Virus record (IMG/VR): IMGVR_UViG_3300021964_009390
Span: 124,001 to 188,000 of that record
Strand: one strand, 5' to 3'
Length of the DNA: 64,000 nt
A program made the translations under genes and the position numbers. Below are positions 163-44,162 of the stretch, piece by piece. A model generated the notes under the pieces. That model was not told the origin of the DNA, did no database searches, and saw nothing but the letters and a program-made list of their open reading frames with translations. Every line of letters starts with the position of its first letter. The stretch's first letter is position 1.

Positions 163-705
163 TCAGTCTATAACTTGTAATGACATGTTTTGTATAGTCG
201 AGTCCGTAAAAGGGTATTGTCTAGATGTAGAGATTGTATATCCAGCCGGGCCTTGTATTATCAAGTCCACTGACCCCACTTTAGTTGGTACTGGTAATTC
301 AAATGTGATTGTGTTATCATTAAACTCATCCCATTGAGGAACAACCACACCAGTGAATTTAGGGTATTCTGTTTTCAACCGATTGGTGTAGTTTTTTTCA
401 AAATAACCGTATTGTTGTTCATTTATGAACATGTCAGGTACACTAGCACTTAAAAATATATTGTTAGTGTCGTACATTCTGTAACCCCTTACATACACTG
501 TTGGTGTTTCTCCAATCCCGACCACCATTTGCTTGGTTGTGTTACTCAAAGAAAACCATGTTATATCTGGTGCGCCCCGAAAGACATCCCCCCGGTTTCC
601 TGAGCGGCTGCCTAAATTATCTTGTTTCACATTGTCAGCGTATTCGTCTAGGGCTTGTTTATCAATAATTTTTGTACGTAGCGTGTTGTTCGGGTCTTTG
701 TTCAT
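163..705 (-). CDS. hypothetical protein, possible IPT/TIG-like beta-sandwich virion protein
   Basis: 180 aa directly after gp15; C-terminal NDNTITFELP..GSVDLIIQGPAG resembles IPT/TIG strands. Confidence 0.45.
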   Translation of the reverse strand: MNKDPNNTLRTKIIDKQALDEYADNVKQDNLGSRSGNRGDVFRGAPDITWFSLSNTTKQMVVGIGETPTVYVRGYRMYDTNNIFLSASVPDMFINEQQYGYFEKNYTNRLKTEYPKFTGVVVPQWDEFNDNTITFELPVPTKVGSVDLIIQGPAGYTISTSRQYPFTDSTIQNMSLQVID

Positions 706-706
706 G

Positions 707-1471
707 TCATTGCGGATTGTCTGGATTATTATTCAGGTTTTTCCAATCAGTCAAACTACCTCCAGTGATATCATCTAGTGACGAAACATTGACGTAGTTT
801 GTTTGGATGTCAAAAATCGTACCGGTGCCTGTCGATCTAGGTTTAGTAAACAACCAGCCTTTTATCGTGAATCCTGTGTTAGCCGATACTCGGTATGCGG
901 AGCTGGCTTGCAAATCTTTCGGGTAATCCATGTTAATGGTACCATTCCACAGCACTTCCGACCGGATTTCTTGTATTGGTGCATCTGGGTCTAGAAATGG
1001 GTCAACACTTTTACTACCTTGCGGTATTTTCCATGATAATATTATGTACGGGTTCGCATAAGGTGCAAAATTAGTAATTATCTGGTCTAAATCAGACTGA
1101 TATTTTGTCATAATGTCCATCGTAACCTCTATATTCACTGGGTTCACCGGAGGTAATTTATCGAATGCATTACTAGCTTCTCGGTGACTGTATCTTTGGG
1201 GGTATGAGAAACCTTCAATTTTGTTAAAAACTCTACCCGGGTCACGCGCGATACTATTCATGGACACGGCGATCACCGGTAATTGAATATGCTGACTCTT
1301 GTTTATAAGGTCGTGTACAACGCGTTGCTTATGCGCGTAAACATATCTCGGTTCAAAAGATTTTGTAGGTTTTCTATCTTTATTGTATCTCTTTACAATT
1401 GTCTCATCAAAAGCTGATAAAAATTGTGTTATTAAATCTTTTACCTCAAAGTTAAATGTATGATATCTCAC
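707..1471 (-). CDS. gp15: tail sheath stabilizer / tail terminator (T4 gp15-like)
   Basis: YHTFNFEVKDLITQFLSAF...YAHKQR...LPVIAVSMNSIARDPGRVFNK...QIITNFAPY...FTIKGWLF pattern; likely start GTG 1471, 5 nt below TAAATA. Confidence 0.8.
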   Translation of the reverse strand: MRYHTFNFEVKDLITQFLSAFDETIVKRYNKDRKPTKSFEPRYVYAHKQRVVHDLINKSQHIQLPVIAVSMNSIARDPGRVFNKIEGFSYPQRYSHREASNAFDKLPPVNPVNIEVTMDIMTKYQSDLDQIITNFAPYANPYIILSWKIPQGSKSVDPFLDPDAPIQEIRSEVLWNGTINMDYPKDLQASSAYRVSANTGFTIKGWLFTKPRSTGTGTIFDIQTNYVNVSSLDDITGGSLTDWKNLNNNPDNPQ

Positions 1472-1482
1472 ATAATTATTTA

Positions 1483-3087
1483 TCAAACAAACCGTTGTAA
1501 GAACCAACCCGGTAGTTTCTCTTTACATTTAGGTAGTACCCTGGATATCATACCGTCTAGTATGTATGTAGTTGAATAATCATCCTTAGATCTTGTACAT
1601 CTACCACAAGACTGTACTAATATATTTAACATTTTATTCTCATACCAGTCTGGGTCGGCTTCTAAAATGGTCTTAACCCGTTTGTCGTTAAACGGTAGAT
1701 AGGGTAGTTTCACTACAATTTGAAATCTGGCTAGATCGTCTTTTAAATCTACACCATGAGTTAGTGATGGTGACATCAATATTGTTGGTTCGTCAGACTG
1801 TTTATGTATGTTGATTATATCTTCATTTGTAACCCCGGGCTCTCTGTATACGAGCCGGTCACATTGAAGCGTTTCATATATAAATTGTGTTATATGATGT
1901 GAATGTGTATGTATCACACCCTTCTCGTCGCCATGATGAGATACTATCTCATTGATATTATCTACTATTTTAGGTAAAAATTTATCTATTGTATTTCTAC
2001 TCAAAGGGTATTTGCTAGAAACATATATTGGGGATTTCGCCGGAGGGAACTCAGACGGTATTTCTATATATTTATAATCTGTGATACCTAATGACTTTGC
2101 GAAGTTTTTGTGGTCCACGATAGTGGCACTCATCAGTAAAATTTTCTCACCGTTATCAAACAGCTGATTAGTTAAAGTGTCTATATGTAAAGGTGTCAGT
2201 CGTACCGTGGTATTGTTTTTTTCTACTATATATTCACAATTGTAAAAGTTGTCTGTACATAGTCGTACCTTGGCTAATAGTCTGTTGATATATGTATATT
2301 TGGATTGAGTTTTACTAGTCCATTTTGATTTTTTTCTCAATTGCTGTTGCAAATACATACGATGGTCATGTAATAAATTGTTCACATCATCTAACCACGA
2401 GTATACCGCCAATGGTTCACTTGACTTGAGTATAGGTAAAGACACCCCGCACCTTTTCGACACGTCATAATCTATAACACATGTGTTATGAGATACAATA
2501 TCGTCTTCTAGTTCGCTAGCTTCATCACATATTAAATATTGCCTTTGCTTGACATGTCCCGGTAGTTGCATATACATTTTATAATTCGTAACACCGTACT
2601 GACTAGTCAACAGTTTGTTTCTATCGTTATGATATGGACATTTACCAGACTCTCGATGCTGTGACAATATATGTCTTGGTATCACAGCAGATTCTATCTC
2701 AACATCCATGCTCGGGTCAATAGTACTCGTGTAGTTGCTTTTACCTTTAAGTGTGTCACATTCGAACAGCGCCACATACTGGTCTTGTAAAGCTTTGGTT
2801 ATTGTCAATGAAATAGCACCATGTGCTTGATCATGCTCGGTATGTATATATTGACCTGTCTGGTCAACCATAAAAGCTCGGTAAGAATTGATGTCCTCGT
2901 ACTTATATTCATCAATCTCTCGTGAGCTCTTCGCGAGGGTACTAGCGAAAAAACTCTTTCCGGAACCGGTCGGAGCATTCAGTATCACCGTATCATTATT
3001 TTTAAATGCAGCCTCTATCTTGTTTAATGTCTTAGACTGCAATGGGGTAGGCTGGTACCCTACCGGAAAGAAATTTAATATAGACAC
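1483..3087 (-). CDS. DinG/Rad3-like SF2 helicase
   Basis: NAPTGSGKS Walker A, DEASELE, SAT, GVDLKDDLARFQIVVKLPY, QSCGRCTRSKDDYSTTYILDG. Confidence 0.85.
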   Translation of the reverse strand: MSILNFFPVGYQPTPLQSKTLNKIEAAFKNNDTVILNAPTGSGKSFFASTLAKSSREIDEYKYEDINSYRAFMVDQTGQYIHTEHDQAHGAISLTITKALQDQYVALFECDTLKGKSNYTSTIDPSMDVEIESAVIPRHILSQHRESGKCPYHNDRNKLLTSQYGVTNYKMYMQLPGHVKQRQYLICDEASELEDDIVSHNTCVIDYDVSKRCGVSLPILKSSEPLAVYSWLDDVNNLLHDHRMYLQQQLRKKSKWTSKTQSKYTYINRLLAKVRLCTDNFYNCEYIVEKNNTTVRLTPLHIDTLTNQLFDNGEKILLMSATIVDHKNFAKSLGITDYKYIEIPSEFPPAKSPIYVSSKYPLSRNTIDKFLPKIVDNINEIVSHHGDEKGVIHTHSHHITQFIYETLQCDRLVYREPGVTNEDIINIHKQSDEPTILMSPSLTHGVDLKDDLARFQIVVKLPYLPFNDKRVKTILEADPDWYENKMLNILVQSCGRCTRSKDDYSTTYILDGMISRVLPKCKEKLPGWFLQRFV

Positions 3088-3093
3088 ATTGGT

Positions 3094-3122
3094 ATTATAT
3101 TAATATTATACTATACTGTCAA
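3094..3122 (-). promoter_or_regulatory. consensus sigma70 promoter TTGACA-17-TATAAT, 6 nt upstream of GTG 3087
   Basis: Exact consensus hexamers with a 17-bp spacer on the minus strand. Confidence 0.85.
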
Positions 3123-3456
3123 CTTGTAATACAGAATTATATAGTCGATGAGGTTTTTTCACAGGTAAATCATCTATTAATAGCTGTGTATGTATATTTT
3201 CATTACATAATGTTTTTAGTCTATAATCAAATACAATTTGCCGATGATCTGTATCAAAATAGTAATCGTATGGGTATGGAACTTCATATAATTTAGGTAT
3301 GTCATGTTGGTTAGTCACTGTGAATCCTATATAATGGCCTCGCTGCGCAACTAATAACAATTTTCCTTGACGTAGCGTTTTACCATTACATACAAACCTC
3401 ACATCATGTTGTATAAGTTCCATGCATACTTGTTCTATTTTTTCACTCAATAGCAT
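3106..3456 (-). CDS. hypothetical protein
   Basis: 116-aa ORF tightly packed in the operon. Confidence 0.7.
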   Translation of the reverse strand: MLLSEKIEQVCMELIQHDVRFVCNGKTLRQGKLLLVAQRGHYIGFTVTNQHDIPKLYEVPYPYDYYFDTDHRQIVFDYRLKTLCNENIHTQLLIDDLPVKKPHRLYNSVLQVDSIV

Positions 3457-3457
3457 G

Positions 3458-3829
3458 TCAAGAGTTCATGAACTGAATTTTTTGAGATGTATCCATAGGT
3501 AATACATTTTCGTTAAAATATGTCCAAAACGTATCATCTCCCGGATACTGATTGAGTATAGTTGTGCTATCAGCTGGAATCATACGAAATGATTGCATCA
3601 TTATATCCCAGGCTAAACATAAATTTTTCGATCTAGGGTCGTACGGTAATTTGCTACCCCCAGGTAAATAATTTAGCACAGTTCGCCCATTCACACTATT
3701 CAGTACACTCTCGTCCAACGTACACAACATACGTCTAGTGATAGGGGCACCGGGTCTAGATCGGCGACGATTGAATCTAATGTCTACAACATTGTTGTTC
3801 AATATTGAATTTAATGTACCTTGGTTCAC
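3458..3829 (-). CDS. DUF2693/WYL-like SH3-fold protein
   Basis: VVDIRF.RR...TRRMLCTLD...AWDIMMQSFRMIP pattern typical of this T4-like phage family. Confidence 0.6.
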   Translation of the reverse strand: MNQGTLNSILNNNVVDIRFNRRRSRPGAPITRRMLCTLDESVLNSVNGRTVLNYLPGGSKLPYDPRSKNLCLAWDIMMQSFRMIPADSTTILNQYPGDDTFWTYFNENVLPMDTSQKIQFMNS

Positions 3830-4263
3830 TAGCCTTCATCTTCTTTTAATCTATGTAGCTTACCAAATATACGTTGAGCATTGATAAATTGACCTCGACC
3901 AATAGTTTCAAATTTGTTATCGTTTTTTATAACCAGATTACTCACCGGAATTCCCATGTTGTTGGGAAATGTTACATAATCACCTGGTTGAGTGGTTAAT
4001 GCACTTTTACCTTGCATCACCACCCGGCCGACTCTCCAGGCCTTAGGGTTCGCGTTCGCTGGGACTACAATTCCATTCCGGATGATTTCCTCTCCAGTTT
4101 CAAACCTATCTACAAACTCTATCAACACAATATCATCTTCTAAAGATTCTACCGCGTATCCAATTAATGTAGAATCTAGCGAATCTTCATGGGCTTTAGA
4201 TAAATCGATTAAACTCTCAGTAGGTTCAATCGCGTCAATGTTTGCTTTTTGTTGTGTACTCAT
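3829..4263 (-). CDS. GroES-like co-chaperonin (T4 gp31 analogue)
   Basis: DDIVLIE...NGIVVP...GRVVMQG......PGDYVTFP Cpn10 pattern. Confidence 0.7.
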   Translation of the reverse strand: MSTQQKANIDAIEPTESLIDLSKAHEDSLDSTLIGYAVESLEDDIVLIEFVDRFETGEEIIRNGIVVPANANPKAWRVGRVVMQGKSALTTQPGDYVTFPNNMGIPVSNLVIKNDNKFETIGRGQFINAQRIFGKLHRLKEDEG

Positions 4264-4636
4264 ATTTTGATAAATCTATGTTTGCTTGTTTTATATAAAC
4301 ATTTATCTCCCTTGTTGAAATTTCAAGTTTTTTTGCTAACTTGATAATAATGTCCATGTACTCGTCACGTGGTTTATGTTTTTTAATGTAATTAATGCGC
4401 TTGAACCGCTCACGTGGTATAATGTAATGCAATAATTTGTAATGGTCCTGTTTATTTTCAAAAACCTGAAACATTATATTCGCGGTGTTGTTTATTAAAT
4501 TGCATGTCTGTTTGTTCAACATGCTACACCATCTATTTACTAAAAACGGTTGGTAGTCGCTCTGCTGGTCCAGAGTCTTGAGTGATGGTTCTTTTTTAGT
4601 AAATAATATATTTGATAGGTAGTTAAATATGTTCAC
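4235..4636 (-). CDS. gp62: clamp loader small subunit (T4 gp62-like)
   Basis: IFNYLSNILFTKK...YQPFLVNRWCSM...HYKLLHYIIPR...YIKK. Confidence 0.65.
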   Translation of the reverse strand: MNIFNYLSNILFTKKEPSLKTLDQQSDYQPFLVNRWCSMLNKQTCNLINNTANIMFQVFENKQDHYKLLHYIIPRERFKRINYIKKHKPRDEYMDIIIKLAKKLEISTREINVYIKQANIDLSKYEYTTKSKH

Positions 4637-5229
4637 TTAACTATCGTCTTGGTCGTCGCAAGAAACATATCATCATTAATATGGTAAAACATGTCTATTA
4701 TCTCGCGCATGAATTGACCAACCTGCATGTTGTTCAAATTAGTAGAAAATGCATGGTCTGGAGCACGATCACCCGCGGTTATGTTTATTCCGGTATGACC
4801 TAGTGTCACCCCGGATTTTACATATGTTATACTCACACTACATTTACCTTTAGGCTGACTTACACCGTTCTGCTCATGATCTTGATGTACGATCAGATCA
4901 TCACCATCCACCTCAATAGGGGCATTGTTTAAAAAACGTGAGCTCAACACATTAGCAATTTGTGTATTTAACAACCGTTGATACGCTACAGCCCCAAACG
5001 GGTCAGACAAGCACGGTATCTCCCACAAAAAATTTATCGCATCATCACTATATATGAACTCATTTTTCAATATATCTTCTGTATCAATCATACCATCTGC
5101 CTCTACAATCATTGGAGACCGGAAGGCAATAATGTTACCTATAGGTAATGTTTTTTCTCTAAAAAATTTATACGCGAATCTATCATGCAGCAGCGCACCA
5201 TCATAACACTCAATATCATTAATTATCAT
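4633..5229 (-). CDS. DUF366 family protein (lipoate/biotin ligase-like fold)
   Basis: YDG..L...FAY...IIAFRSPM...D.ED...I.SDD..NF..E...AVAYQRL...DGDDL...K.SVSI...HTGINI. Confidence 0.7.
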   Translation of the reverse strand: MIINDIECYDGALLHDRFAYKFFREKTLPIGNIIAFRSPMIVEADGMIDTEDILKNEFIYSDDAINFLWEIPCLSDPFGAVAYQRLLNTQIANVLSSRFLNNAPIEVDGDDLIVHQDHEQNGVSQPKGKCSVSITYVKSGVTLGHTGINITAGDRAPDHAFSTNLNNMQVGQFMREIIDMFYHINDDMFLATTKTIVK

Positions 5230-5236
5230 ACGATAT

Positions 5237-5265
5237 ATTATAGTATATTAAATCGTAGTTTTCAA
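5237..5265 (-). promoter_or_regulatory. sigma70-type promoter TTGAAA-17-TATAAT, 7 nt upstream of ATG 5229
   Basis: Read directly from the sequence. Confidence 0.75.
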
Positions 5266-5271
5266 TTTATT

Positions 5272-6117
5272 TTATTGTGTATCAGTTATATACTTTATTA
5301 CCGGTTGTAAAGAAATCCCTACATGTTCATCGTGTACACCTATATCAAATTTATTAGATAATATATCTATCAATCTCTTCATATGGTGGTTACCAGGGAG
5401 GTTTGGGTTCTTTGATAGGAGTTGCTCGAGAGTGTCTATATCATCAACAGGATAACCGAACCCTGCGCAATTATTTTTTGTTTTACACACTATTTGATCA
5501 TAACTTCTCTCATGGTAATGAACGAGGCATATACTAGTCGTATCGTACGCTACTTCTGATTCATGTACACCGTGTACATGGTGGTTCCCATGGTCAGTTG
5601 TTTTAAATTTATTATATTTATAAAACGTTTTTGCAAATTGATTGTAGCTATTGTGATAACCTCTCGTGGCTTGTCTAGCCGCCCGGTCATAACCACCTGG
5701 TGTTGTTATGTATGACCCTATATAATCTGTTTTGTATATACCTGTATCATTTTTAACATTCAATTGATTTAAATACTCAACAGTCCTATCCGGATGTAGC
5801 GTCTGTGTATTGTAATCATAATAAGTTATAAACTCATCAATGTCTACTGGCCACGCGAATTGGTAATCTTTCCTACCCACATCTCTCAGTATATGATGCA
5901 TGTGAGCTCCCTTGGCTCTATAATCATCACGTGATGTTAAATATATACCATGACTATTTTTGTATTGCTCACACATTTCATATGTACCATCGTCGCTACG
6001 ATTATCTACAATATATATGTTGTTATAACCAAACATGTTACCATGATATATTATCCAGTCCTCAACAATATCAATTTCATTTTTGACCATGGTGGCCAAC
6101 TTTACCAAACTACTCAT
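5272..6117 (-). CDS. glycosyltransferase, GT-A/GT2-like
   Basis: MVKNE..IVEDWI.YH, VDN.SDDGT, DIDEF, HGNH, HYH.RS. Confidence 0.8.
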   Translation of the reverse strand: MSSLVKLATMVKNEIDIVEDWIIYHGNMFGYNNIYIVDNRSDDGTYEMCEQYKNSHGIYLTSRDDYRAKGAHMHHILRDVGRKDYQFAWPVDIDEFITYYDYNTQTLHPDRTVEYLNQLNVKNDTGIYKTDYIGSYITTPGGYDRAARQATRGYHNSYNQFAKTFYKYNKFKTTDHGNHHVHGVHESEVAYDTTSICLVHYHERSYDQIVCKTKNNCAGFGYPVDDIDTLEQLLSKNPNLPGNHHMKRLIDILSNKFDIGVHDEHVGISLQPVIKYITDTQ

Positions 6118-6925
6118 TTAACCATGGGGTGTTAATTTTTACGTCACAACTATCAACCGGTTTATACTCCCATTGATTAATGTTTATTAGTTCGTTGGCA
6201 CGACCTACTCCATCGAATTGCCCACCAGTTATCAAATCATTATTTTGGATCCGCTGTTCAATTAAATTCATGGGTATACCGTGGCCATTAATTATATCCT
6301 CACATCGCGCTCTTTTCCGGTCATACCCGGTGTCGTGATAATGCAGGTACACAATGTCGGTTTGATGCTGTTTATTGTTTGTACTGGTACCGTGATGGTA
6401 TCCTAGATCTACTGTTTTAAAAGTACCGTTCCGGAAAAACTTTTTACACATGCCCGAGTCTGTTAAGTCCCAGTTAAATTTGTTTATTTCATGCACCGGG
6501 TGATCGTAATTTTTTTTCTCCGGTACACTATTCAACCAACCTCTTGTCATGTATATTTCTCCGTCGTCTGGTAGTGTTGCTATATATTTTTTAATTGTAT
6601 CTGAACATGTTACAACTCGGTTGCCCATACCATCCCACATACATATAAATTCATCAGCATCTAACGGTATCGAAATACCTGGTTGTTTGTTGTATTGTGC
6701 TATTTTGTTAGTGATCACATCACCTTTTTCTATAAACACGTCATGGCTGTACACGTTTATACCATAATTTTCTTTATATTCTTGCAATATTTCAAGGGTA
6801 CCGTCTGTAGAATTGTTATCATACACATGTATAGCCCACCATGGTACTATAGACCCGTGATGGTTGAGCCAGTCACGTATTATATGACTTTCATTTTTAA
6901 TATATGCGAATATTCTATTATACAT
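6110..6925 (-). CDS. glycosyltransferase, GT-A/GT2-like (tandem paralogue)
   Basis: IKNE..IIRDWLNHH, YDNNSTDGT, DADEF, GYH, LHYH. Confidence 0.8.
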   Translation of the reverse strand: MYNRIFAYIKNESHIIRDWLNHHGSIVPWWAIHVYDNNSTDGTLEILQEYKENYGINVYSHDVFIEKGDVITNKIAQYNKQPGISIPLDADEFICMWDGMGNRVVTCSDTIKKYIATLPDDGEIYMTRGWLNSVPEKKNYDHPVHEINKFNWDLTDSGMCKKFFRNGTFKTVDLGYHHGTSTNNKQHQTDIVYLHYHDTGYDRKRARCEDIINGHGIPMNLIEQRIQNNDLITGGQFDGVGRANELININQWEYKPVDSCDVKINTPWLNE

Positions 6926-6931
6926 GTTATT

Positions 6932-7603
6932 TTAGTCGATTATTTTTATATGTTCACATGATTTTATATAGAGTTGATCCTTCGGTGGTAGTGAAGATAT
7001 ATCCACCCATGCAAGAGCAATAAACTTACTATCCGGGTATGTAACTTGCTTCAAATACTCAATGTACGCTAATACACCGGATGGGTATGTACCGTACATT
7101 GTATCTACAAGGCTGCTGTAGTATTGTTCATCTATTAAGTTGTATCTTCGAATATCATCTTGTGTCCATATTTTATGAATTATTTTTCTCTTAGTGTATA
7201 GATCATTTGGATATATAACTGTGTTATATGGTCCAATACCGTCGTGCAGCACTCCATCCGGATTTCTCACGTCTACACAATACTGAGCGCATTTGTTGTA
7301 TAGTTTTTGCTTTTTGTCACTCGTGATTACTTGATGTACATTTTCCATACGCTCTAGATGTGGTATGTTTTCAGCTGTTGGATTCACCATTACAATAGGT
7401 GTTTCAAATTGTAACTGACGTATATTAATATTGTTACCGATTTCCCGCTCATTCCACCTAGAAGTCAAAACGCTAGGTACCGGCTTGGTGTTAACTGTAG
7501 CGACTAAATCATCAAAACTAGTGACTGTTTTGGATTTGTTTACAAATTGGTATTCAACTCCATACACACCTGGCAATATCTCTATAGATTTACTCGCAGT
7601 CAT
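6932..7603 (-). CDS. hypothetical protein in glycosylation island
   Basis: ORF coupled to gmd; likely start MTASK at 7603. Confidence 0.6.
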
Positions 7604-8594: not shown

Positions 8595-8599
8595 TACAC

Positions 8600-9523: not shown

Positions 9524-9524
9524 G

Positions 9525-34648: not shown

Positions 34649-34656
34649 TCATTTAT

Positions 34657-34881
34657 TTACAGTACATTTTTAAGATTTCTACGCAATATGGTCAATTGCT
34701 CCCTTTTAACCTTACGTTTACTACGTTTTTTACGCTTAGTTACAGGTTTAAAACCAATAAAAGTAGGTATTCTCGCATCACCATCAGCATAACCACCACC
34801 AACATCACCAAATACACCCCCTGCACCGGCTACATTATCTTCATTGATAGTTTTAACGAAATAACTTTTAAATAGATTCAT
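34657..34881 (-). CDS. small basic late protein, CTS-like N-terminus
   Basis: MNLFKSYFVKTINE, YADGDARIP, basic tail. Confidence 0.65.
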   Translation of the reverse strand: MNLFKSYFVKTINEDNVAGAGGVFGDVGGGYADGDARIPTFIGFKPVTKRKKRSKRKVKREQLTILRRNLKNVL

Positions 34882-34917
34882 GGATTATGTGTGTAAAGTA
34901 TACTATAATAAGTATTT

Positions 34918-37188: not shown

Positions 37189-37204
37189 TCTTGATTGTAT
37201 ATTG

Positions 37205-38266
37205 ATGAATTTAAACAACTTTCAGTTTAAACATCATGAAGTATGTTGTATATCTGATATCCATATTGGAGTGCATCAGAATAGTCAGATGTGGTTGGAT
37301 ATATGTGATGAATGGGGAGATTGGTTACTAGATGAACTGAAATCTAAAAATATAAAAGATATAATCATATGTGGTGATTTATTTCACTATAGAGATGAGA
37401 TTGCTGTAAACACCATACACCACGTGACGGACTTTTTACATAAGTTTAATGAATTTAATATAATAATGTTGGTGGGTAACCATGATGCATACTACAAGGA
37501 TCGTTCAGATGTTAACAGTATGAGTATATTGTCCGGGTGGAACAATATATGTGTGGTTGATAAGGATATATATGTACATGAGCATGGTTCTAACCGTCTG
37601 GCTTTTGCCCCATGGGGCGTTACCGCGGATCAAATTCCGAACTGTGATATATTGTTCGGTCATTTTGAAATTGAGAACTTTAACTTGTCTCAACACTTTG
37701 TATGTAAGCATGGTATAAAATCGAAAAGTCTTCTGGATAAAACAGATCTAGTGATAACCGGACATTTTCATACCAGAGAACAACGAGAGTATAGGAATGG
37801 GCAAATTGTATATCTAGGTAATCCGTATCAAATGGATTTTGGTGATTCTGGACAGACTAAAGGTTACTATATACTAGATATTAATAATAAAAAGTACAAT
37901 TTCTGTGAAAATAAAATATCCCCTACACATGAAAAAATAACATTAAGCGGTCTAGTAGAGCATGGAGATATTGACAATCATATTATAAATAAAATATCAA
38001 ACAACATAGTACGTTTTGTTGTAGATAAGAACATATCACCTGATGAGATAGAACAGCTGTTAAGAATTTTAAGTTCATACAAGCCATTGATTCTCACTAC
38101 AGATTACAACATAAATTTTGATAGATTTGGTTTATCTGACGAAGATACCGATTTAAGCGGAGTTAGCATAGAATCTGCAATAGATGAATTTGTAAATTTA
38201 TTAGATATAAACAATAAAGAAAAAATAATACAATATACAACAAATTTATACAATCGTTGTAAATGA
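37205..38266 (+). CDS. gp47: recombination endonuclease gp47 (Mre11/SbcD)
   Basis: SDIHIG, GDLF, GNHD, GHFH. Confidence 0.92.
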   Translation: MNLNNFQFKHHEVCCISDIHIGVHQNSQMWLDICDEWGDWLLDELKSKNIKDIIICGDLFHYRDEIAVNTIHHVTDFLHKFNEFNIIMLVGNHDAYYKDRSDVNSMSILSGWNNICVVDKDIYVHEHGSNRLAFAPWGVTADQIPNCDILFGHFEIENFNLSQHFVCKHGIKSKSLLDKTDLVITGHFHTREQREYRNGQIVYLGNPYQMDFGDSGQTKGYYILDINNKKYNFCENKISPTHEKITLSGLVEHGDIDNHIINKISNNIVRFVVDKNISPDEIEQLLRILSSYKPLILTTDYNINFDRFGLSDEDTDLSGVSIESAIDEFVNLLDINNKEKIIQYTTNLYNRCK

Positions 38267-38283
38267 ACTAGATAATATTTGAT

Positions 38284-40122
38284 ATGAAACATATACAGTT
38301 TAGAAAATTATCAATCAAAAATTTTTTATCGGTCGGAGATACACCAGTAGAAATAGACTTCCGGCCAGGTCTGCATATCATAACAGGTATAAATAAAGAC
38401 AAGGTTGACCGCCGCAATGGTGTGGGTAAAAGTACTATCGCCGATGCTTTATATTTTGCACTGTATGGTAGTACATTGAGGGAGTTAAAAAAAGAGTTTA
38501 TATGTAATAATATATCCCCTGGTAGATGTGAAGTATCGTTGTCAATAGAGATACAAGACAAGCAAAAAAGTACAGAATATAGAATAACTAGACTATTAAA
38601 TCCAACCAAGTGTTATATCTACAAGGATGGCGAAGACTGTACTCGAGACACAATATTACATACAACAGACTTTATCAACAACCTCATAAACACTTCTGAG
38701 GATGTGTTTCAAAACTGTATATTAATGACAGTAAACAACACAATACCTTTCATGGCAAAGAAACGCATAGATAAGCGAAAATTTATAGAAGGTATATTAA
38801 ATTTAGAAGTTTTTAGCGGTATGATAACCATGTTGAGAAATGAATATAACGAAAAGCGCCGTGAATTAGAAACTGAATGTACCGTGTTTGATGAAGTTCA
38901 AAACTCTCTTAAAAATTATAATGAACAAAAAAACTTACATGACAATAGCAAGTATGAAAAACTTAAAAAGTATAAGACAAGACAACAGGACAACATAGCA
39001 GAGTTACGAGATATAGAAAGTAAAATTAAAAATACAAAACTGCTAGACTCGACAGAATATATAACTAAATCAGACATTCTAGAAAAAAGGCTAGCGGCAT
39101 GCAAGAGTAAGACATCTAAAATAAACACTGAAATTATAGAGAAAAAAACAAACATCAATATATCATTAAAACAGCTAGAAACTCTGTCTGGTGTGAAATC
39201 AGAACCAATATGTCCTACATGCTTGAGAAAAATAGATCATGACGACATAACACATATTGAACAAGAAAAAATAAATATAAAACAAAACATAAAAACATAT
39301 AAACAAGCGGTAGATGATAGTACATGTGAGTATAATGATTTAATAAACGTAAAAACTGAACTTGAAGACCGGATAGACAAAAATAACGATTCCATATCAC
39401 AAGCTAAACTAGTCGAACAACAACTAGAGAGTTACAACACTCGTAAAGAACAACTGAACAACTGGCAGACTGAGTTGAAACAAGACATACAAGAATTGAA
39501 CAACCAATCCAATCAATTCGATACTTTAATAAAAGATACCGAGTCTAGAATAACTTCAATTAAAGATAACATTAATAATATAAAAGAAAATATAAAAGAT
39601 TTAGATGTTGTGAAGTTTGTTGTATCGGAGGAAGGGGTAAAATCATACATTGTAAAAAAGATATTGCAGTTGTTGAACAATAAACTATCATATTACTTGA
39701 AAAAAATGGATAGTAATTGTGTTTTATTTTTCAATGAGTATTTTGAAGAACAAATCGTAGATGACAAAGGCAAAATATGTAGCTACTTCAATTTTAGTGG
39801 AGCTGAACGAAAAAATATAGATCTCGCATGCTTATTCACATTTATGGATATACGGAGACTGCAAGGAGATGTAGCATTCAACGTGAGTGTATATGACGAA
39901 CTGTTTGATAGTAGCTTGGACGAGAAGGGTGTTGACCTTGTCATACAAATATTAAAAGAGAGACTAGAAAAATATAATGAATGTATGTATGTAATATCTC
40001 ATCGAAAGGAAAGTGTTAATTTCACCACACAAGCCGAAATAAGAGATGGTGATATAATTTTCCTCAAAAAAGAGAACGGTATAACCACGAGGGTACCATT
40101 CACAAGAGACAAGTCTAACTAA
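38284..40122 (+). CDS. gp46: recombination ATPase gp46 (Rad50/SbcC)
   Basis: KNFLSVG, NGVGKST, CPTC hook, FSGAE, DELFDSSLD, ISH. Confidence 0.93.
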   Translation: MKHIQFRKLSIKNFLSVGDTPVEIDFRPGLHIITGINKDKVDRRNGVGKSTIADALYFALYGSTLRELKKEFICNNISPGRCEVSLSIEIQDKQKSTEYRITRLLNPTKCYIYKDGEDCTRDTILHTTDFINNLINTSEDVFQNCILMTVNNTIPFMAKKRIDKRKFIEGILNLEVFSGMITMLRNEYNEKRRELETECTVFDEVQNSLKNYNEQKNLHDNSKYEKLKKYKTRQQDNIAELRDIESKIKNTKLLDSTEYITKSDILEKRLAACKSKTSKINTEIIEKKTNINISLKQLETLSGVKSEPICPTCLRKIDHDDITHIEQEKINIKQNIKTYKQAVDDSTCEYNDLINVKTELEDRIDKNNDSISQAKLVEQQLESYNTRKEQLNNWQTELKQDIQELNNQSNQFDTLIKDTESRITSIKDNINNIKENIKDLDVVKFVVSEEGVKSYIVKKILQLLNNKLSYYLKKMDSNCVLFFNEYFEEQIVDDKGKICSYFNFSGAERKNIDLACLFTFMDIRRLQGDVAFNVSVYDELFDSSLDEKGVDLVIQILKERLEKYNECMYVISHRKESVNFTTQAEIRDGDIIFLKKENGITTRVPFTRDKSN

Positions 40123-40123
40123 A

Positions 40124-41269
40124 ATGTTTGTAAATCCATTAAACCCTACCGGAAACACTTCATTTCAGTTCAACAAACCGGCACCTACCACACCACCAAC
40201 TTCAAAATTACCGGAAAATACACTGCCTAGATTTTTAAATTTCGTTGCTGATTACACCGGATGTGGCCATTGGAGAATGTTGTGGCCGGAACAAATACTG
40301 AACAGTTACAGAATGTGTGTGATGCAAAGCTCTACCATGATGGTGACAGATCCCAAGCATTTTTCTGGTGTGAGAACTGTTAGAGTACAGAGACAAGCGA
40401 GCCCTACACAGGAAAAATACTTAAATTATTTGAAAAATAATCTCGGTATCCGATTGGTATATGATATTGATGATGTATGTTTTGGAGAGGATATTCCACA
40501 TTATAATCCGTTCCGGACTGCTTTTACAGACCCGGTCATAATTGACGGTATCAAACGTATGATGGAACTTTGCGATGAGATGACAGTTACAACTCCAGCT
40601 CTTAAAAAATATTATCAAGACAATACAAATCAAAAAAACATAACAGTTATACCAAATTACCCACCAAGATTCTGGATAGGTAACATGTATAATACCAAGC
40701 AAAGAAGTAAAATTTATGACAAGCATGCGAAAAAACCTAGGATACTTTACGCCGGGAGTAGTTCACATTTTGATATAAAAAATAATAATCAACACATCGA
40801 TGATTTGTCACATGTGAATAGTTATATAATAAAAACACTCAACAAATATCAATGGGTGTTTGTAGGAGGGATCCCATACCAATTGAAATCATACGTGAAC
40901 AGTGGTAAGATTGAGTATCATAAATGGAACCATTTGTATGATTACCCATATGAAATATCTAAATTAGAAATAACTGCATCGATTGTACCTCTACAAGACA
41001 ACCAATTCAATCGCGGTAAAAGTGATATAAAATTTTTAGAATGTGCAGCTTTGGGTATCCCGACTGTGTGTCAAGACATAGGAGTTTACAATAAATGTAA
41101 ACATTTATTCAAGACAGTAGACTGTTTAGATGAACAGCTCAACACATTACTATCTACAAAGAAACATTACATGTCAACATGTGATAGAAATCACGCGCAT
41201 GTGTGTAGTATGTGGTTAGAAAACGAAAACAATAGAAACAAATATTTAAAAATATATCAGGTTGATTAA
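40124..41269 (+). CDS. GT-B glycosyltransferase within the replication module
   Basis: GCGHWR..WP, YDIDD, VIPN, YAGS.SH, PL.DN.FN..KS.IK.LE.AALGIP. Confidence 0.8.
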   Translation: MFVNPLNPTGNTSFQFNKPAPTTPPTSKLPENTLPRFLNFVADYTGCGHWRMLWPEQILNSYRMCVMQSSTMMVTDPKHFSGVRTVRVQRQASPTQEKYLNYLKNNLGIRLVYDIDDVCFGEDIPHYNPFRTAFTDPVIIDGIKRMMELCDEMTVTTPALKKYYQDNTNQKNITVIPNYPPRFWIGNMYNTKQRSKIYDKHAKKPRILYAGSSSHFDIKNNNQHIDDLSHVNSYIIKTLNKYQWVFVGGIPYQLKSYVNSGKIEYHKWNHLYDYPYEISKLEITASIVPLQDNQFNRGKSDIKFLECAALGIPTVCQDIGVYNKCKHLFKTVDCLDEQLNTLLSTKKHYMSTCDRNHAHVCSMWLENENNRNKYLKIYQVD

Positions 41270-41294
41270 CAGATGTGGTAATATAAATAGTAAC

Positions 41295-41513
41295 ATGCCA
41301 ACAACTAAAAAAGCAAAAACTACAAAAACTTCAGCCCCAGACTACAAAATCGTACTTGAAGAAGTGTTAGATCTGAGCTCAGCTCTAGTTAGAGAGATTG
41401 ACAACATTATGGAGTCACAATTACCACCGGCTCAAGTTGGTAAAGTTTTAGGTGATGTGGTTTCCGGATTTCAACAGAGACTAGAAGAATATAAAGTATC
41501 CGCGAAACTATAA
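41295..41513 (+). CDS. small hypothetical late protein
   Basis: ATG 41295 lies 5 nt below TATAAATA. Confidence 0.65.
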   Translation: MPTTKKAKTTKTSAPDYKIVLEEVLDLSSALVREIDNIMESQLPPAQVGKVLGDVVSGFQQRLEEYKVSAKL

Positions 41514-41520
41514 ATTTATA

Positions 41521-41549
41521 TTGATATATTCACATATATACTCTATAAT
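41521..41549 (+). promoter_or_regulatory. sigma70-type promoter TTGATA-17-TATAAT, 6 nt upstream of the polymerase GTG
   Basis: Read directly from the sequence. Confidence 0.8.
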
Positions 41550-41555
41550 TAGAGT

Positions 41556-44162
41556 GTGTATAGGAATATAATTTACGACGCTAAAAACGAAACGTGTAAA
41601 CTCTTCACGTGGGACAACTCTGGAAACCGGGTGTGTTATGACACGAGTTTCAACCCGTATGTGTACTATGAAACTAATGGTAAATCTAACGGTAAGAGCA
41701 TATTCAATACCGCGGTAAAAAAACGATCATTCCGGACACAATACGATCGATACAAATTTGTAAAAGACTGCGGTGTAAAAAGGGTATTTGAAAATATACC
41801 TAGTGAACAACAATTTTTAATAGATCAGTACTGGGAAAAAAACGAATCTCCGGAATTCACAGAAAATCCTTTGAAGGTATTATTTATAGACATTGAAACA
41901 TACAGCCCAGATTCATTTCCAGATGTAGATAACCCCTCTCACCCAATCAATGTAGTAACCATATACGATACATTACAAAATAAATTTTATTCTTGGGGTA
42001 CCAAACAATACGATACTACAGATATTGAAACACCCGGTGGTAGCATTGTTAAAAAAGACATATTATACTATCATTGCAAAACAGAAGTTGAGATGCTACG
42101 TCGCTTCTTGGATTATATAAAAAATGATTACCCGGATATCATAACTGGTTGGAATAGTGAATTATTTGACATACCATACATAATTTCACGAATGGGTCGT
42201 ATCTTGGATGAGAATGAATATAAACAACTGAGCCCTGTAGGTGAAGTGTTCTGCCGTGAGATCGCCGGTCAGTTTGGCAAGAGCCGTTTCCGGTGGTATA
42301 TAAAAGGTGTTTCTAGTTTAGATTACCTAGATATATACAAGAAATTCAGCATGGGTCTCCGGGAGAATTACAAACTCGACACCATTGCACAGTTCGAACT
42401 AGGTGATAAAAAAATAGACTATGGCGGTATGAATCTAGCTCAATTAGCAGATGAAAATTGGAAAACATTCGTAGACTACAACATACAAGACGTAAACCTA
42501 CTTGTCCGGATGGAAGAGAAGTTGCAGTACCTTAAACTGCTGAGAATGTTGGCGTATGTGGGACTATCACCACTAGAAAGCGCCATGGGGACATTAACTG
42601 TAATCACAGGTGCATCCGTCATACAAGCACGTAAAGACGGCTATGTAATACCAACATTTATAAAAGAAAACACAAAAGATGGTAAATACGAAGGAGCGTA
42701 TGTAGGAGAACCAGAGCGTGGTTTTCAACAAGACATTGTAAGTTTTGATGCTAACAGTCTATATCCTAGTACCATGATAACACTGAATTTGTCACCGGAA
42801 ACTAAAATAGGTTCTGTTGTAGAGAAAACCCCGGATCATATAACAGTGAAGCATGTGAACGGTAAGTTATTCAATTTATCACACGATAAATTCTTAAAAT
42901 TCATCAAAAAAGAAAAAATAGCTATAACAAAAGCTAAAGCACTGTTTAGCCAAAAAACAAAAGGCATCATACCTAAAATTGTAGACAAGCTGTATGCGCA
43001 ACGTGTTGAGTTCAAAAAGGAATTGGATAGAACACGCCGTGAGTTATCAAAACTTGATCCCGAAACATCAGAATATCAAAACAAAAAAAATGAATCTGAA
43101 ACTTGGTGGGTAAAACAATATACAGTAAAAATATTGATCAACAGTATATACGGTTACTTCGGTAACAAATATGCACCTATGGGAGACAGTGACATCGCGC
43201 GAAGCATAACATTAACTGGCCAAGCTGTTATCAAGCAATCAAATAAAATACTGTATGATTATATAAAACAAATGACAGGTAATGACAACTTACGTGTTGA
43301 AGATGTAGTCAAATATAATGATACGGACTCAAGCTACATTAGTATAAAATGTATAAATGACAGCAAATCTCTTGAGCTGTGTGAATCCGGTAAAGTTGCT
43401 GATCATACATATAAAATAGTACAAGACATTGAGGATCATTTGAACGTGGAGATTACTAAATGGGCTCAACGTAATTTAAATAGTCACGATCCCCGGTTCG
43501 TTTTCAAACGAGAGTGTATAGCAGATGTAGGTATGTTTCTAGAAAAAAAGAGATATGTTCTACATGTGTTAGATGATGAAGGTATACCTGTTGATAAGTT
43601 CAAGTACACCGGTGTAGAGGTAGTGAGAACCACCATACCCGAACCTGTGAAGCCGTATATTAAGAAAATAATCGAAACAATGCTCACCACTCGAAACCTA
43701 GGTGAAACCAACAAGCTGTTGCATGAAACATACGATATATTCAAGAGTTTGGAAGTAGAAGACATCGCTTTCGCGATGGGTTGTAAGGAATATGATAAAT
43801 ATGCCAGTAGATGTGATGAGTTTAACACGTGCAAAGGTATGCCGATCCATGTGAAAGCTAGTTATATACACAACAAAATCTTAGAAAAATTAAATATTGA
43901 GAACAAATATGAATCTATCGGTAATGGTGACAAGGTGAGATACTTGTATGTACAACAACCGAACAGATACGGGGTGAATGCCATAGGTTACAAGTACTAT
44001 TATCCGGATGAATTCAAAGAAATATTCAAAGTGGATCGAGAATTAATGTTTGACAAGATTGTATATAGTATCATCGAAAGATTTTACGATTGTGTGAAAT
44101 GGAAAGCAAAAAAACCTGGCATGGCAGTACAGACTGATTTATTTGAACTGTTCTCTACATGA
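41556..44162 (+). CDS. gp43: family B DNA polymerase (gp43)
   Basis: DIET exonuclease, GWN..FD, SFDANSLYPS, KILINSIYG, YNDTDS, KKRY. Confidence 0.97.
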   Translation: MYRNIIYDAKNETCKLFTWDNSGNRVCYDTSFNPYVYYETNGKSNGKSIFNTAVKKRSFRTQYDRYKFVKDCGVKRVFENIPSEQQFLIDQYWEKNESPEFTENPLKVLFIDIETYSPDSFPDVDNPSHPINVVTIYDTLQNKFYSWGTKQYDTTDIETPGGSIVKKDILYYHCKTEVEMLRRFLDYIKNDYPDIITGWNSELFDIPYIISRMGRILDENEYKQLSPVGEVFCREIAGQFGKSRFRWYIKGVSSLDYLDIYKKFSMGLRENYKLDTIAQFELGDKKIDYGGMNLAQLADENWKTFVDYNIQDVNLLVRMEEKLQYLKLLRMLAYVGLSPLESAMGTLTVITGASVIQARKDGYVIPTFIKENTKDGKYEGAYVGEPERGFQQDIVSFDANSLYPSTMITLNLSPETKIGSVVEKTPDHITVKHVNGKLFNLSHDKFLKFIKKEKIAITKAKALFSQKTKGIIPKIVDKLYAQRVEFKKELDRTRRELSKLDPETSEYQNKKNESETWWVKQYTVKILINSIYGYFGNKYAPMGDSDIARSITLTGQAVIKQSNKILYDYIKQMTGNDNLRVEDVVKYNDTDSSYISIKCINDSKSLELCESGKVADHTYKIVQDIEDHLNVEITKWAQRNLNSHDPRFVFKRECIADVGMFLEKKRYVLHVLDDEGIPVDKFKYTGVEVVRTTIPEPVKPYIKKIIETMLTTRNLGETNKLLHETYDIFKSLEVEDIAFAMGCKEYDKYASRCDEFNTCKGMPIHVKASYIHNKILEKLNIENKYESIGNGDKVRYLYVQQPNRYGVNAIGYKYYYPDEFKEIFKVDRELMFDKIVYSIIERFYDCVKWKAKKPGMAVQTDLFELFST

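What the first reader, a model, noticed from the sequence alone, without database searches (positions are those of the whole stretch)
246..44007. CCGG over-represented about 4-5 fold in an AT-rich phage
Seen: hand counts give 14 CCGG in 1-3000 (246, 592, 822, 962, 1147, 1237, 1276, 1509, 1835, 1855, 2040, 2559, 2960, 2966) and about 15 in the 2.6-kb polymerase gene. About 3 per 3 kb are expected at roughly 36% GC, and I saw no GGCC in 1-3000. Known: phages normally deplete palindromic restriction targets, and enrichment is associated with motifs that are actively modified (GATC with Dam). Inference: CCGG is a selected modification site (methylation, or sequence-specific deazaguanine or glycosyl modification) used as a self-mark, possibly paired with a phage nuclease that cuts unmodified DNA.
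Basis: partly seen in the sequence, partly recalled or inferred. Interest (0 to 1): 0.68.

Follow-up and report, generated by a model that had tools for sequence, protein, structure and literature searches.

The report
CCGG excess in a guanine-modifying phage
An uncultured marine T4-like phage carries three to four times more copies of the restriction-type word CCGG than chance or codon usage allows, and it encodes the full enzyme set known to replace every guanine in phage DNA, but nothing ties that chemistry to CCGG and the cause of the excess is still unknown.

Summary
CCGG occurs 278 times in the window, against 67±7.5 in dinucleotide-preserving shuffles, and 1016 times in the 222-kb genome, against 330 expected. 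It is the most over-represented tetranucleotide.

The excess survives the controls:
- Synonymous-codon shuffling: 972 against 546, z 26.
- Dicodon shuffling: 972 against 731, z 20.
- It is present in all three reading frames and in non-coding DNA (2.7x).
- It is purely a 4-mer effect.

- The phage has no DNA methyltransferase of the four main Pfam families.
- It does encode a complete 7-deazaguanine set: FolE, QueD, QueE, QueC, QueF, DpdA3 and DpdN. The genes and their order match Flavobacterium phage immuto, in which all dG is replaced by fdPreQ1. That is a global modification, not a CCGG-specific one.
- Other DpdA3 phages show no CCGG excess (immuto 1.1x, CP220 0.4x).
- Among marine relatives the ratio runs from 0.11x to 5x.
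- Sites are randomly spaced, poorly conserved in position, and change at the neutral rate between strains. Gains roughly equal losses.
- Likely hosts (Verrucomicrobiota) do not share the bias.

Best reading: a weak, genome-wide, lineage-specific pressure at the DNA level (selection-like, 2Ns about 1.5-1.8 per site) for a high density of CCGG. The protein that reads or drives this is unidentified.

The parts
1..64000 (.). 278 CCGG sites scattered over the whole window. This is part of 1016 sites in the 222-kb genome.
   Evidence: 278 against 67 +/- 7.5 in dinucleotide shuffles. Spacing is exponential (CV 1.17, KS p 0.2).
41556..44162 (+). It holds 15 CCGG against 2.8 expected from its composition.
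23010..23813 (-). QueE-like radical-SAM 7-carboxy-7-deazaguanine synthase.
   Evidence: phrog_2076 at 4.7e-42. Gene call.
23818..24525 (-). [quoted passage not shown]
   Evidence: PF01242 on the called gene.
28277..28921 (+). FolE, GTP cyclohydrolase I.
   Evidence: PF01227. phmmer 3e-36 to nt-1 FolE.
47139..47849 (+). QueC, 7-cyano-7-deazaguanine synthase.
   Evidence: PF06508 at 2.4e-59. 36-39% identity to QueC of KVP40-like Vibrio phages.
47851..48522 (+). Class-II glutamine amidotransferase immediately after QueC (a split Gat/QueC pair).
   Evidence: PF13522 at 2.3e-8. Homologous to the ORF after QueC in phage nt-1. Conserved in relatives with and without the CCGG excess.
34148..34648 (-). 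PD-(D/E)xK nuclease next to uvsY and a UvsW-like helicase. Considered as the CCGG-reading nuclease, but it is present in all relatives regardless of CCGG content.
   Evidence: PF24608 at 1.4e-23. Homologues in G001-G004.
59342..59737 (+). 131-aa ORF of unknown function, found only in CCGG-rich relatives (G005, G001, G002) and not in the CCGG-normal contigs G003 and G004. A weak lead only.
55144..55482 (+). 112-aa ORF of unknown function. It has clear homologues in CCGG-rich relatives, only a 46-residue partial match in G004 and none in G003. A weak lead only.

Best explanation
Shown:
- CCGG is kept at about 4.5 sites per kb by a force acting on the DNA word itself. Synonymous choices that complete CCGG are taken 3-5 times more often than in other contexts, in every frame, and the excess also holds in non-coding DNA.
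- The force is specific to a lineage of uncultured marine T4-like phages.
- It is not inherited from the likely hosts.
- It does not preserve individual sites.

Shown by homology:
- The phage carries DpdA3, DpdN, QueF and FolE/QueD/QueE/QueC.
- This is the same set and cluster order as Flavobacterium phage immuto, whose DNA has every dG replaced by 7-(formylamino)methyl-7-deazaguanine (fdPreQ1).

Inferred:
- All guanines of this phage are modified, not only those in CCGG. The usual cost of a restriction-type palindrome is therefore lifted.
- On top of that, a weak selection-like pressure favours a high density of CCGG. The odds ratios of 4-6 per opportunity correspond to 2Ns of about 1.5-1.8.
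- CCGG would then be the recognition word of an unidentified phage or host protein. It would be a reader of the site rather than the writer of the modification, for example a restriction-modification-type enzyme. Such enzymes evidently act in this phage-host arena, because a relative and some Verrucomicrobiota strongly avoid the same word.
- Sites come and go at synonymous positions while the density is held at equilibrium.
For: Real and at DNA level.

Context-dependent codon choice:
- NCC before GG is used 25-46% of the time, against 3-15% before GA or GT.
- Arg CGG after a C-ending codon is 26%, against 6-8% otherwise.
- Pro CCG before G is 36%, against 12-14% before A or C.

Lineage specificity:
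- Relatives with polymerase identity of 77% or more have 3.5-5.2x.
- The 58% group has 1.7-3.9x, with a second-order Markov ratio of 1.6-2.1.
- The 45-54% groups have about 1x.
- DpdA3-bearing marine contigs run from 0.11x to 3.85x, most at 1.4-2.5x.

Not host mimicry:
- The phage's DUF1501 gene is closest to marine Opitutia/Puniceicoccaceae (58% identity).
- 64 verrucomicrobial and planctomycete loci have a second-order Markov ratio of 0.53-1.29 and strongly depleted CTAG.
- A phage Hc1 histone-like gene also points to a PVC-group host (the Planctomycetota-Verrucomicrobiota-Chlamydiota group).

Density rather than sites:
- Spacing is exponential.
- Shared occupancy of conserved dipeptide opportunities has an odds ratio of 1.98 with G005 and 1.16 with G001, against 5-10 for control words.
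- In a strain 4.8% diverged over 12.3 kb, 47 sites are kept, 15 are private to this genome and 14 are private to the variant. 15 changed sites were seen against 16.6 expected at neutral class-specific rates.

Global guanine modification:
- DpdA3 is 44% identical to the immuto and CP220 proteins, with 60+ invariant columns.
- DpdN is 44% identical, E 9e-55.
- QueF and the cluster order match immuto.
- The chemistry of immuto, CP220 and phiST is taken from PMC10516641.

Selection-like rather than simple mutation bias:
- The gain in C before GG comes at the expense of A and G (transversion partners), not of T.
- The transition precursors CTGG and CCAG are not depleted.
Against: - No CCGG-reading protein was identified.
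- The benefit of a high site density is unknown.
- The loss rate of sites between strains is not visibly below neutral (z -0.5). That is what pure mutation bias predicts, although the power is low with 62 sites.
- CTAG, CATG and CGCG are also elevated against the codon null (1.72, 1.40, 1.28), and palindromes in general are slightly elevated. CCGG may therefore be the extreme of a broader process.
- Global modification is inferred from gene content only.
- Some guanine-containing palindromes (GGCGCC, GACGTC, CTTAAG) are still strongly depleted. That is unexpected if every G were fully protective.
- The host assignment rests on one auxiliary gene and one histone-like gene.
Confidence: 0.38

Rival explanations
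1. Context-dependent mutation or repair bias. This could be a polymerase, nucleotide-pool or mismatch-correction process, including biased gene conversion in the heteroduplex-rich replication of T4-like phages. It would create CCGG faster than other words, with no function for the sites themselves.
For: - Sites are randomly spaced and poorly conserved in position.
- Gains roughly equal losses, and sites change at the neutral rate between strains.
- The excess is uniform over genes, frames and non-coding DNA.
- Palindromes as a class are mildly elevated.
- An altered dGTP pool is plausible, because a MazZ-like dGTP diphosphohydrolase and a P-loop kinase sit in the DpdA3 cluster.
Against: - There is no Vsr-type endonuclease.
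- The T-containing precursors CTGG and CCAG are not depleted, and CTAG is enriched. This is the opposite of a VSP-type skew.
- The C gained before GG replaces A and G, which would need context-specific transversions.
- Other DpdA3 phages with the same chemistry lack the bias.
- No known mechanism targets exactly this 4-mer.
Confidence: 0.27
2. One reading: CCGG is itself the target of a sequence-specific modification. This could be a motif-specific DpdA, an undetected methyltransferase, or a glycosyl transfer. It would serve as a self-mark, possibly with a phage nuclease that cuts unmarked DNA.
For: - A 4-bp palindrome is the typical target of type II enzymes.
- The phage has deazaguanine genes.
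- Some DpdA1 enzymes are motif-specific: GA and GGC in CAjan, GA in iggy (titles and abstracts of PMC7544227 and PMC10484667).
- The genome has many unassigned ORFs, many glycosyl- and sulfotransferases and two restriction-fold nucleases.
Against: - No DNA methyltransferase family is found in a CheckV-complete genome.
- The only SAM methyltransferase lies in a sugar gene cluster.
- DpdA3 is the subfamily that gives complete replacement of G (PMC10516641).
- Immuto and CP220 show no CCGG excess.
- A self-mark model does not by itself predict enrichment.
- Sites are not conserved.
Confidence: 0.13
3. Compositional by-product: codon usage, codon-pair or dinucleotide bias, amino-acid order, or drift towards the host's oligonucleotide signature.
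For: - Part of the raw 3-4x is compositional. CCG and CGG trinucleotides are 1.29x, and the second-order Markov model reduces the ratio to 1.8-1.9.
- CCGG-compatible dipeptides are about 1.3x over-represented, but nearly as much so in CCGG-normal relatives.
Against: - Z-scores of 20-28 remain after synonymous and dicodon shuffles.
- The excess is in all frames and in non-coding DNA.
- Candidate host genomes have second-order Markov ratios of 0.53-1.29.
- Relatives with similar GC and proteins have about 1x.
Confidence: 0.04
4. Mere relaxation: guanine modification makes restriction irrelevant, so CCGG drifts up from a formerly avoided state.
For: The predicted fdPreQ1 DNA should resist enzymes with G in their site (PMC10516641).
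Against: - Relaxation gives observed/expected of about 1, as in immuto (1.10). It does not give 3-4x, or 1.8x over the codon null.
Confidence: 0.02

Closest known systems
[quoted passage not shown]
   Same: - Same gene set.
- Same local order: DpdA3, formyltransferase DpdN, P-loop kinase, QueF.
- DpdA3 and DpdN are each 44% identical.
   Different: - Immuto is not T4-like (it has a family A polymerase).
- It infects a Flavobacterium.
- It has normal CCGG (1.10x over 22 kb).
- Modification of this phage's own DNA is untested.
Campylobacter phage CP220 (T4-like, DpdA3, 100% dADG)
   Same: - T4-like myovirus.
- DpdA3 homologue at 44% identity, next to a P-loop kinase and a phosphohydrolase.
   Different: - CCGG is depleted (0.42x).
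- It has no QueF or DpdN.
- It carries a different final base.
Subcluster B3 mycobacteriophages: GATC and GGATCC four-fold over-represented genome-wide (PMC4841201)
   Same: A restriction-type palindrome enriched about 4x, genome-wide, in one subclade only, and unexplained.
   Different: - Different word and different host.
- No link to deazaguanine: the queuosine gene block is described as specific to subcluster B2 (PMC11772480).
Motif-specific DpdA1 modification in CAjan (GA, GGC) and iggy (GA)
   Different: - Different DpdA subfamily.
- Partial (16-32%) rather than complete replacement.
- The tools held no report of target-motif enrichment in those phages.
VSP-repair skew in E. coli (CCWGG-related words up, CTAG down); from my own knowledge, not checked here
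   Same: A repair enzyme tied to a methylation site shifts oligonucleotide frequencies genome-wide without any function for the sites.
   Different: - No Vsr gene here.
- CTAG is enriched.
- The T-precursors are not depleted.
Restriction-site avoidance in phages
   Same: It concerns the same class of word. It is seen in this group too: relative L156 has CCGG at 0.11x, and this genome has CTTAAG at 8 against 73 and TTAA at 0.56x.
   Different: The sign is opposite for CCGG in this lineage.

Membership tests
Target of a type II-like DNA methyltransferase (HpaII/MspI-type CCGG methylation) | A DNA methyltransferase gene (C5, N4/N6 beta, Dam-type alpha, gamma) in the phage. | tested here: not met
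   PF00145, PF01555, PF02086 and PF02384 give no match at E<=1 in the complete genome. The only Methyltransf_24 protein sits among sugar genes.
Target of a type II-like DNA methyltransferase (HpaII/MspI-type CCGG methylation) | A modified base present at CCGG in virion DNA. | not testable with these tools
   All public runs holding the phage are kept as contigs only.
7-deazaguanine DNA modification, DpdA3/DpdN (fdPreQ1) type | A DpdA3-subfamily transglycosylase. | tested here: met
   The protein at genome 8810-9730 is 44% identical to immuto 'DNA guanine transglycosylase' (2e-57) and to the CP220 homologue. There are 60+ invariant columns.
7-deazaguanine DNA modification, DpdA3/DpdN (fdPreQ1) type | A complete preQ1 pathway: FolE, QueD, QueE, QueC, QueF. 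| tested here: met
7-deazaguanine DNA modification, DpdA3/DpdN (fdPreQ1) type | A DpdN formyltransferase encoded beside the pathway. | tested here: met
   The protein at genome 9727-10272 is 44% identical to immuto DpdN (YP_010114479), E 9e-55, and lies adjacent to DpdA3.
7-deazaguanine DNA modification, DpdA3/DpdN (fdPreQ1) type | dG actually replaced in virion DNA. | not testable with these tools
   Needs LC-MS or native sequencing.
Motif-specific deazaguanine insertion (as with DpdA1 of CAjan and iggy) | A transglycosylase of a subfamily with shown motif specificity, and only partial replacement of G. | tested here: not met
   The only DpdA found is DpdA3, which is reported to modify completely. 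No Pfam TGT match exists elsewhere in the genome.
Compositional artefact (codon, dinucleotide, host signature) | The excess disappears under codon- and dinucleotide-preserving nulls, or matches the host. | tested here: not met
VSP-type repair-driven skew | A Vsr endonuclease, with depletion of the T:G precursor words. | tested here: not met
   There is no PF03852 match. CTGG is 1.12, CCAG 0.97 and CTAG 1.72 against the codon null.
Lineage-specific palindrome over-representation (the B3 mycobacteriophage GATC type) | A several-fold, genome-wide excess of one short palindrome confined to a subclade. | tested here: met
   Compared with PMC4841201.

The most novel reading that the evidence does not exclude
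CCGG carrying four bulky fdPreQ1 groups is a functional self-mark or decoy whose density is under selection. One possibility is a site that a phage protein reads to tell its own DNA from host DNA. Another is a non-cleavable sponge for the CCGG restriction-modification enzymes that appear common in Verrucomicrobiota: it would titrate the host methyltransferase or nuclease and turn the host system against its own chromosome. This would be the first case of a phage selected to accumulate, rather than avoid, a restriction site because hypermodification has inverted the site's cost.
Probability: 0.1. Interest if true: 0.85.

Novelty: new variant of a known kind. Interest (0 to 1): 0.58.

Why it matters
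Phages are expected to lose restriction-type palindromes. Here one is held at three to four times its expected frequency, in a clade whose members range from strong avoidance to five-fold excess. Gene content predicts that the DNA of this clade has no ordinary guanine at all.

If the excess is selected, it points to an unknown reader of hypermodified DNA, or to a new counter-defence logic. If it is mutational, it reveals a context-specific mutational signature linked to a modified-nucleotide lifestyle.

In either case the word frequency is a cheap marker for finding such phages in metagenomes. This genome also extends the DpdA3/DpdN (fdPreQ1-type) system to large T4-like phages that probably infect marine Verrucomicrobiota.

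Tried and rejected
1. Looked for a DpdA among the unassigned ORFs around the window's que genes (352 aa at 24564-25622, 551 aa at 26154-27809, 463 aa at 45710-47101, 234 aa at 48522-49226). Nothing came from Pfam, PHROGs, one word-based homologue search or two ESM Atlas look-ups. The real DpdA3 lies outside the window.

2. Compared with the presumed DpdA2 of Vibrio phage nt-1 (the 464-aa ORF390 between FolE and QueC). No homologue is present here.

3. Host mimicry: rejected.

4. Vsr-type repair: rejected.

5. Association of the excess with a particular gene:
   - QueC and the amidotransferase, the PD-(D/E)xK nuclease and the TnsA-like nuclease occur in relatives with little or no CCGG excess as well as in CCGG-rich ones.
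   - DpdN shows no relation to the ratio.
   - The 463-aa ORF is absent from the CCGG-rich contig G005.

6. DpdA3 could not be scored in the CCGG-normal contigs G003 and G004. They are fragments that end at QueF, so its absence there means nothing.

7. Periodicity, clustering and longer motifs: none found.

8. Effect on protein sequence: CCGG-compatible dipeptides are only marginally more frequent than in CCGG-normal relatives.

9. Read-level evidence: all 14 runs are kept as contigs, so no modification or allele-frequency signal was available. One run gave a 4% diverged strain, of which only 40 of 213 differences were listed.

10. Two look-ups returned the window's own contig, because the 'variant' proteins differed only in the first letter (a GTG start).

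11. The link between the B3 mycobacteriophage GATC excess and deazaguanine genes was checked and is not supported.

12. The large representative-protein search, structure prediction and complex prediction were not used, because no claim rested on them.

Full report
**What the window is.**
- The window is bases 124,001-188,000 of a 222,461-bp IMG/VR virus record.
- CheckV rates the record 100% complete.
- The same sequence was assembled independently from JGI, ENA and Logan data.
- It is a distant T4-like myovirus. Its gp43-type polymerase is only about 31% identical to those of cyanophages.
- It has gp23, gp32, UvsX, UvsY, a sheath and a large terminase.
- The genome is 39.3% GC; the window is 37.2% GC.

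**The observation.**
- The window holds 278 CCGG, against 77 from base composition, 67.0 +/- 7.5 from dinucleotide-preserving shuffles (none of 100 reached 278) and 149 from a second-order Markov model (z 14.7).
- The genome holds 1016 against 330. CCGG ranks first of 256 tetranucleotides and is evenly spread.
- GGCC, which has the same composition, is at 0.56-0.72.

These were run on 279 ORFs.
- Shuffling synonymous codons within each gene gives 546 +/- 16, against 972 observed (z 26).
- A dicodon shuffle that keeps protein, codon usage and all dinucleotides gives 731 +/- 12 (z 20).
- Shuffling codon order gives 412.
- All three frames carry the excess, and non-coding DNA has 44 against 16.3.
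- Against the synonymous null, CCGG is again first of 256 words (1.78, z 28).
- Flanks show no preference, and CCGG-containing 5-mers sit at their third-order Markov expectation. The word is exactly four bases.
- Codon choice shows the force directly:
  - TCC, ACC, GCC and CCC are used 25-46% of the time before a Gly codon, but 3-15% before GA or GT.
  - Arg CGG is 26% after a C-ending codon, against 6-8% otherwise.
  - Pro CCG is 36% before G, against 12-14% before A or C.
- These odds ratios of about 4-6 correspond to a selection-like coefficient 2Ns of about 1.5-1.8 per opportunity. This figure is my own calculation.

**What modification genes exist.**
- No C5, N4/N6, Dam-type or gamma-class DNA methyltransferase is found.
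- No thymidylate-synthase-like hydroxymethylase, no Pfam-detectable TGT and no Vsr is found.
- The window does hold FolE, QueD, QueE, QueC and a glutamine amidotransferase.
- Outside the window, next to the capsid genes, lies a compact cluster (genome coordinates):
  - A 306-aa protein at 8810-9730. It is 44% identical to the 'DNA guanine transglycosylase' of Flavobacterium phage immuto and to its CP220 homologue, which places it in DpdA3.
  - A formyltransferase at 9727-10272, 44% identical to immuto DpdN (E 9e-55).
  - A MazZ-like dGTP diphosphohydrolase at 10597-11064.
  - A P-loop kinase at 11080-11637.
  - QueF at 11621-12535.
- Immuto has the same order: DpdA, DpdN, kinase, QueF.
- According to Cui et al. 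2023 (PMC10516641):
  - Immuto DNA has lost its dG peak and carries fdPreQ1.
  - It resists enzymes whose sites contain G.
  - DpdA3 is the subfamily that modifies completely (CP220, phiST, immuto).
- By homology, this phage is therefore predicted to replace all guanines, not those of one motif.

**Does that chemistry explain CCGG?** Not by itself.
- Immuto has CCGG at 1.10x and CP220 at 0.42x. The DpdA2 phage nt-1 has 0.07x.
- Among relatives found through the polymerase, the ratios are:

| Polymerase identity to this phage | CCGG ratio |
|---|---|
| 77% or more | 3.5-5.2x |
| about 58% | 1.7-3.9x (second-order Markov ratio 1.6-2.1) |
| 45-54% | about 1x |

- Most of the relatives at about 1x (the 49-54% identity group, including G003 and G004) still keep QueC and the amidotransferase.
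- Seventeen marine contigs that carry a DpdA3 51-86% identical to this one range from 0.11x to 3.85x, most at 1.4-2.5x.
- The word is therefore a fast-evolving trait in this phage group, and it is pushed in both directions.

**Is it the host's signature?**
- The phage's DUF1501 gene is closest to marine Verrucomicrobiota (Opitutia/Puniceicoccaceae MAGs, up to 58% identity).
- The phage also encodes PSCyt2/PSD1 proteins, at least seven sulfotransferases and an Hc1 histone-H1-like protein. All of these point to a PVC-group host.
- Sixty-four verrucomicrobial and planctomycete loci have CCGG second-order Markov ratios of 0.53-1.29 and strongly depleted CTAG. The phage bias is not copied from such hosts.
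- Some of these bacteria (Rubritalea, Prosthecobacter) avoid CCGG three-fold. That suggests CCGG-specific restriction systems are active in the phylum.

**Sites or density?**
- Spacing is indistinguishable from random (CV 1.17, KS p 0.2) and has no periodicity beyond codon phase.
- In codon alignments with relatives, joint occupancy of conserved CCGG opportunities is close to independence. The odds ratio is 1.98 with G005 and 1.16 with G001, whereas control words give 5-10.
- The fraction of opportunities used stays at about 0.2 in G000, G005 and G001. It is 0.10 in G002 and 0.05 in G003.
- A strain 4.8% diverged was recovered from a 2023 run (12.3 kb).
  - It keeps 47 sites. 15 are private to this genome and 14 to the variant.
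  - 15 changed sites compare with 16.6 expected from class-specific neutral rates.
  - G/C four-fold sites change twice as fast as A/T ones, so CCGG is held against an AT-biased flux.
- Individual sites are therefore close to neutral, and what is maintained is their number.

**Mechanism.**
- A word-specific, strand-symmetric, frame-independent, lineage-specific pressure calls for a sequence-specific protein or process.
- I favour weak selection for site density, acting through an unidentified reader. The reasons are:
  - The C gained before GG displaces A and G rather than T.
  - The transition precursors are not depleted.
  - No Vsr-like function exists.
  - The same word is clearly 'seen' by restriction-type systems in this arena.
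- Global guanine modification would remove the normal cost of the site. All of this is inference.
- A context-specific mutational or conversion bias remains a serious rival. Loss of sites is not measurably slower than neutral, and CTAG, CATG and CGCG (1.72, 1.40 and 1.28 against the codon null) and palindromes in general are also elevated.
- CTAG, however, is not enriched in non-coding DNA (0.69). CCGG is the only word enriched everywhere.

**Comparison with what is known.**
- The modification system is a new member of the DpdA3/DpdN class.
- The enrichment has one published analogue that I could find: the unexplained four-fold GATC/GGATCC excess of subcluster B3 mycobacteriophages (PMC4841201). 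That excess is not linked to deazaguanine genes.
- The tools held no report of CCGG enrichment, or of target-word enrichment in deazaguanine phages.

**Limits.**
- Gene calls outside the window are my own greedy ORF calls.
- About 150 ORFs remain unassigned, and for the genome outside the window only ORFs of 120 aa or more at 1-120 kb were scanned against Pfam, mostly in pooled batches that listed 25 families each. The 188-222 kb tail region and six boundary-spanning genes were not scanned. A novel enzyme could be hidden among them.
- Relatives are genome fragments.
- The host is inferred.
- Modification was not observed.

**Verdict.** The cause of the excess is unresolved, and a selection-like density pressure is the best current reading.

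Noticed in passing
whole window and genome (e.g. counts): TAAG/CTTA is the most depleted tetranucleotide (0.31x), on both strands. TTAA is 0.56x and CTTAAG occurs 8 times against 73 expected. GACGTC, GGCGCC and AGGCCT are also 0.26-0.36x. The pattern is shared by the closest relatives (G005, G001, L142-144, L157). It looks like restriction avoidance persisting beside the CCGG excess.
   Followed up: partly
coding regions genome-wide: CTAG (1.72x), CATG (1.40x) and CGCG (1.28x) are also elevated against the synonymous-codon null. All four CNNG palindromes therefore lead the list, and 4- and 6-bp palindromes as a class are mildly over-represented (p 0.006 and 7e-5). CTAG is not enriched in non-coding DNA (0.69x).
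   Followed up: partly
outside window: G000:C1:8810-12535 (L030:8810-12535): The cluster DpdA3, DpdN, a small ORF, a MazZ-like dGTP diphosphohydrolase (PF18909, 7.5e-22), a P-loop kinase and QueF. CP220 has an HD phosphohydrolase, DpdA3 and a 'thymidylate kinase'. Immuto has a hydrolase, DpdA, DpdN and a kinase. This recurrent nucleotide hydrolase plus kinase beside DpdA3 hints that complete replacement may involve the nucleotide pool and not only post-replicative exchange.
   Followed up: partly
outside window: G000:C1:32277-32660 (+) (L031:12277-12660): A phage-encoded tmRNA gene (ARAGORN; Rfam RF00023, 90 bits, E 2.7e-35). Also tRNA-Met at 78905-78980 and tRNA-Thr at 80307-80382.
   Followed up: yes
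outside window: G000:C1:23854-24033 (+) (L031:3854-4033): A 59-aa histone H1-like Hc1 protein (PF07432, 1e-13), a family typical of Chlamydiae and their PVC relatives. Homologues are present in the CCGG-rich relatives G001 and G002.
   Followed up: partly
outside window: G000:C1:14893-19690, 40000-62000 and 70000-98000; window 5000-16600: An unusually large auxiliary gene load:
- a PrkA, DUF444 and SpoVR trio;
- DUF1501 and a PSCyt2/PSD1 protein (closest to marine Opitutia);
- at least seven sulfotransferases;
- many glycosyltransferases, sugar epimerases/dehydratases, an N-formyltransferase, WbqC and UvdE;
- ClpB-like and Hsp20 proteins.
   Followed up: partly
outside window: G000:C1:88981-91857: The longest CCGG-free stretch (2.9 kb) has ordinary GC (0.385) and only small ORFs. 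It may be a recently acquired segment that has not yet taken on the genome's bias.
   Followed up: no
L156 (IMGVR_UViG_3300017780_008441); L069, L071 (Rubritalea): A marine phage contig with DpdA3 (51% identity), DpdN, the kinase and QueF has CCGG at 0.11x (4 against 35.5). Rubritalea loci have 0.33x. The same word is strongly avoided elsewhere in this phage-host group.
   Followed up: partly
window 4633-5229 (-): A DUF366 protein (PF04017, 5.6e-21), conserved at 53-66% identity in all relatives examined. Its function is unknown, and the family is mostly archaeal.
   Followed up: no
window 1-6000, run X6, and locus L161: Strains of this phage about 4-5% diverged occur in marine metagenomes of 2023-2025, while near-identical copies occur in estuary and marine samples of 2018. 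Substitutions are 80% transitions, and G/C four-fold sites change twice as fast as A/T ones.
   Followed up: partly
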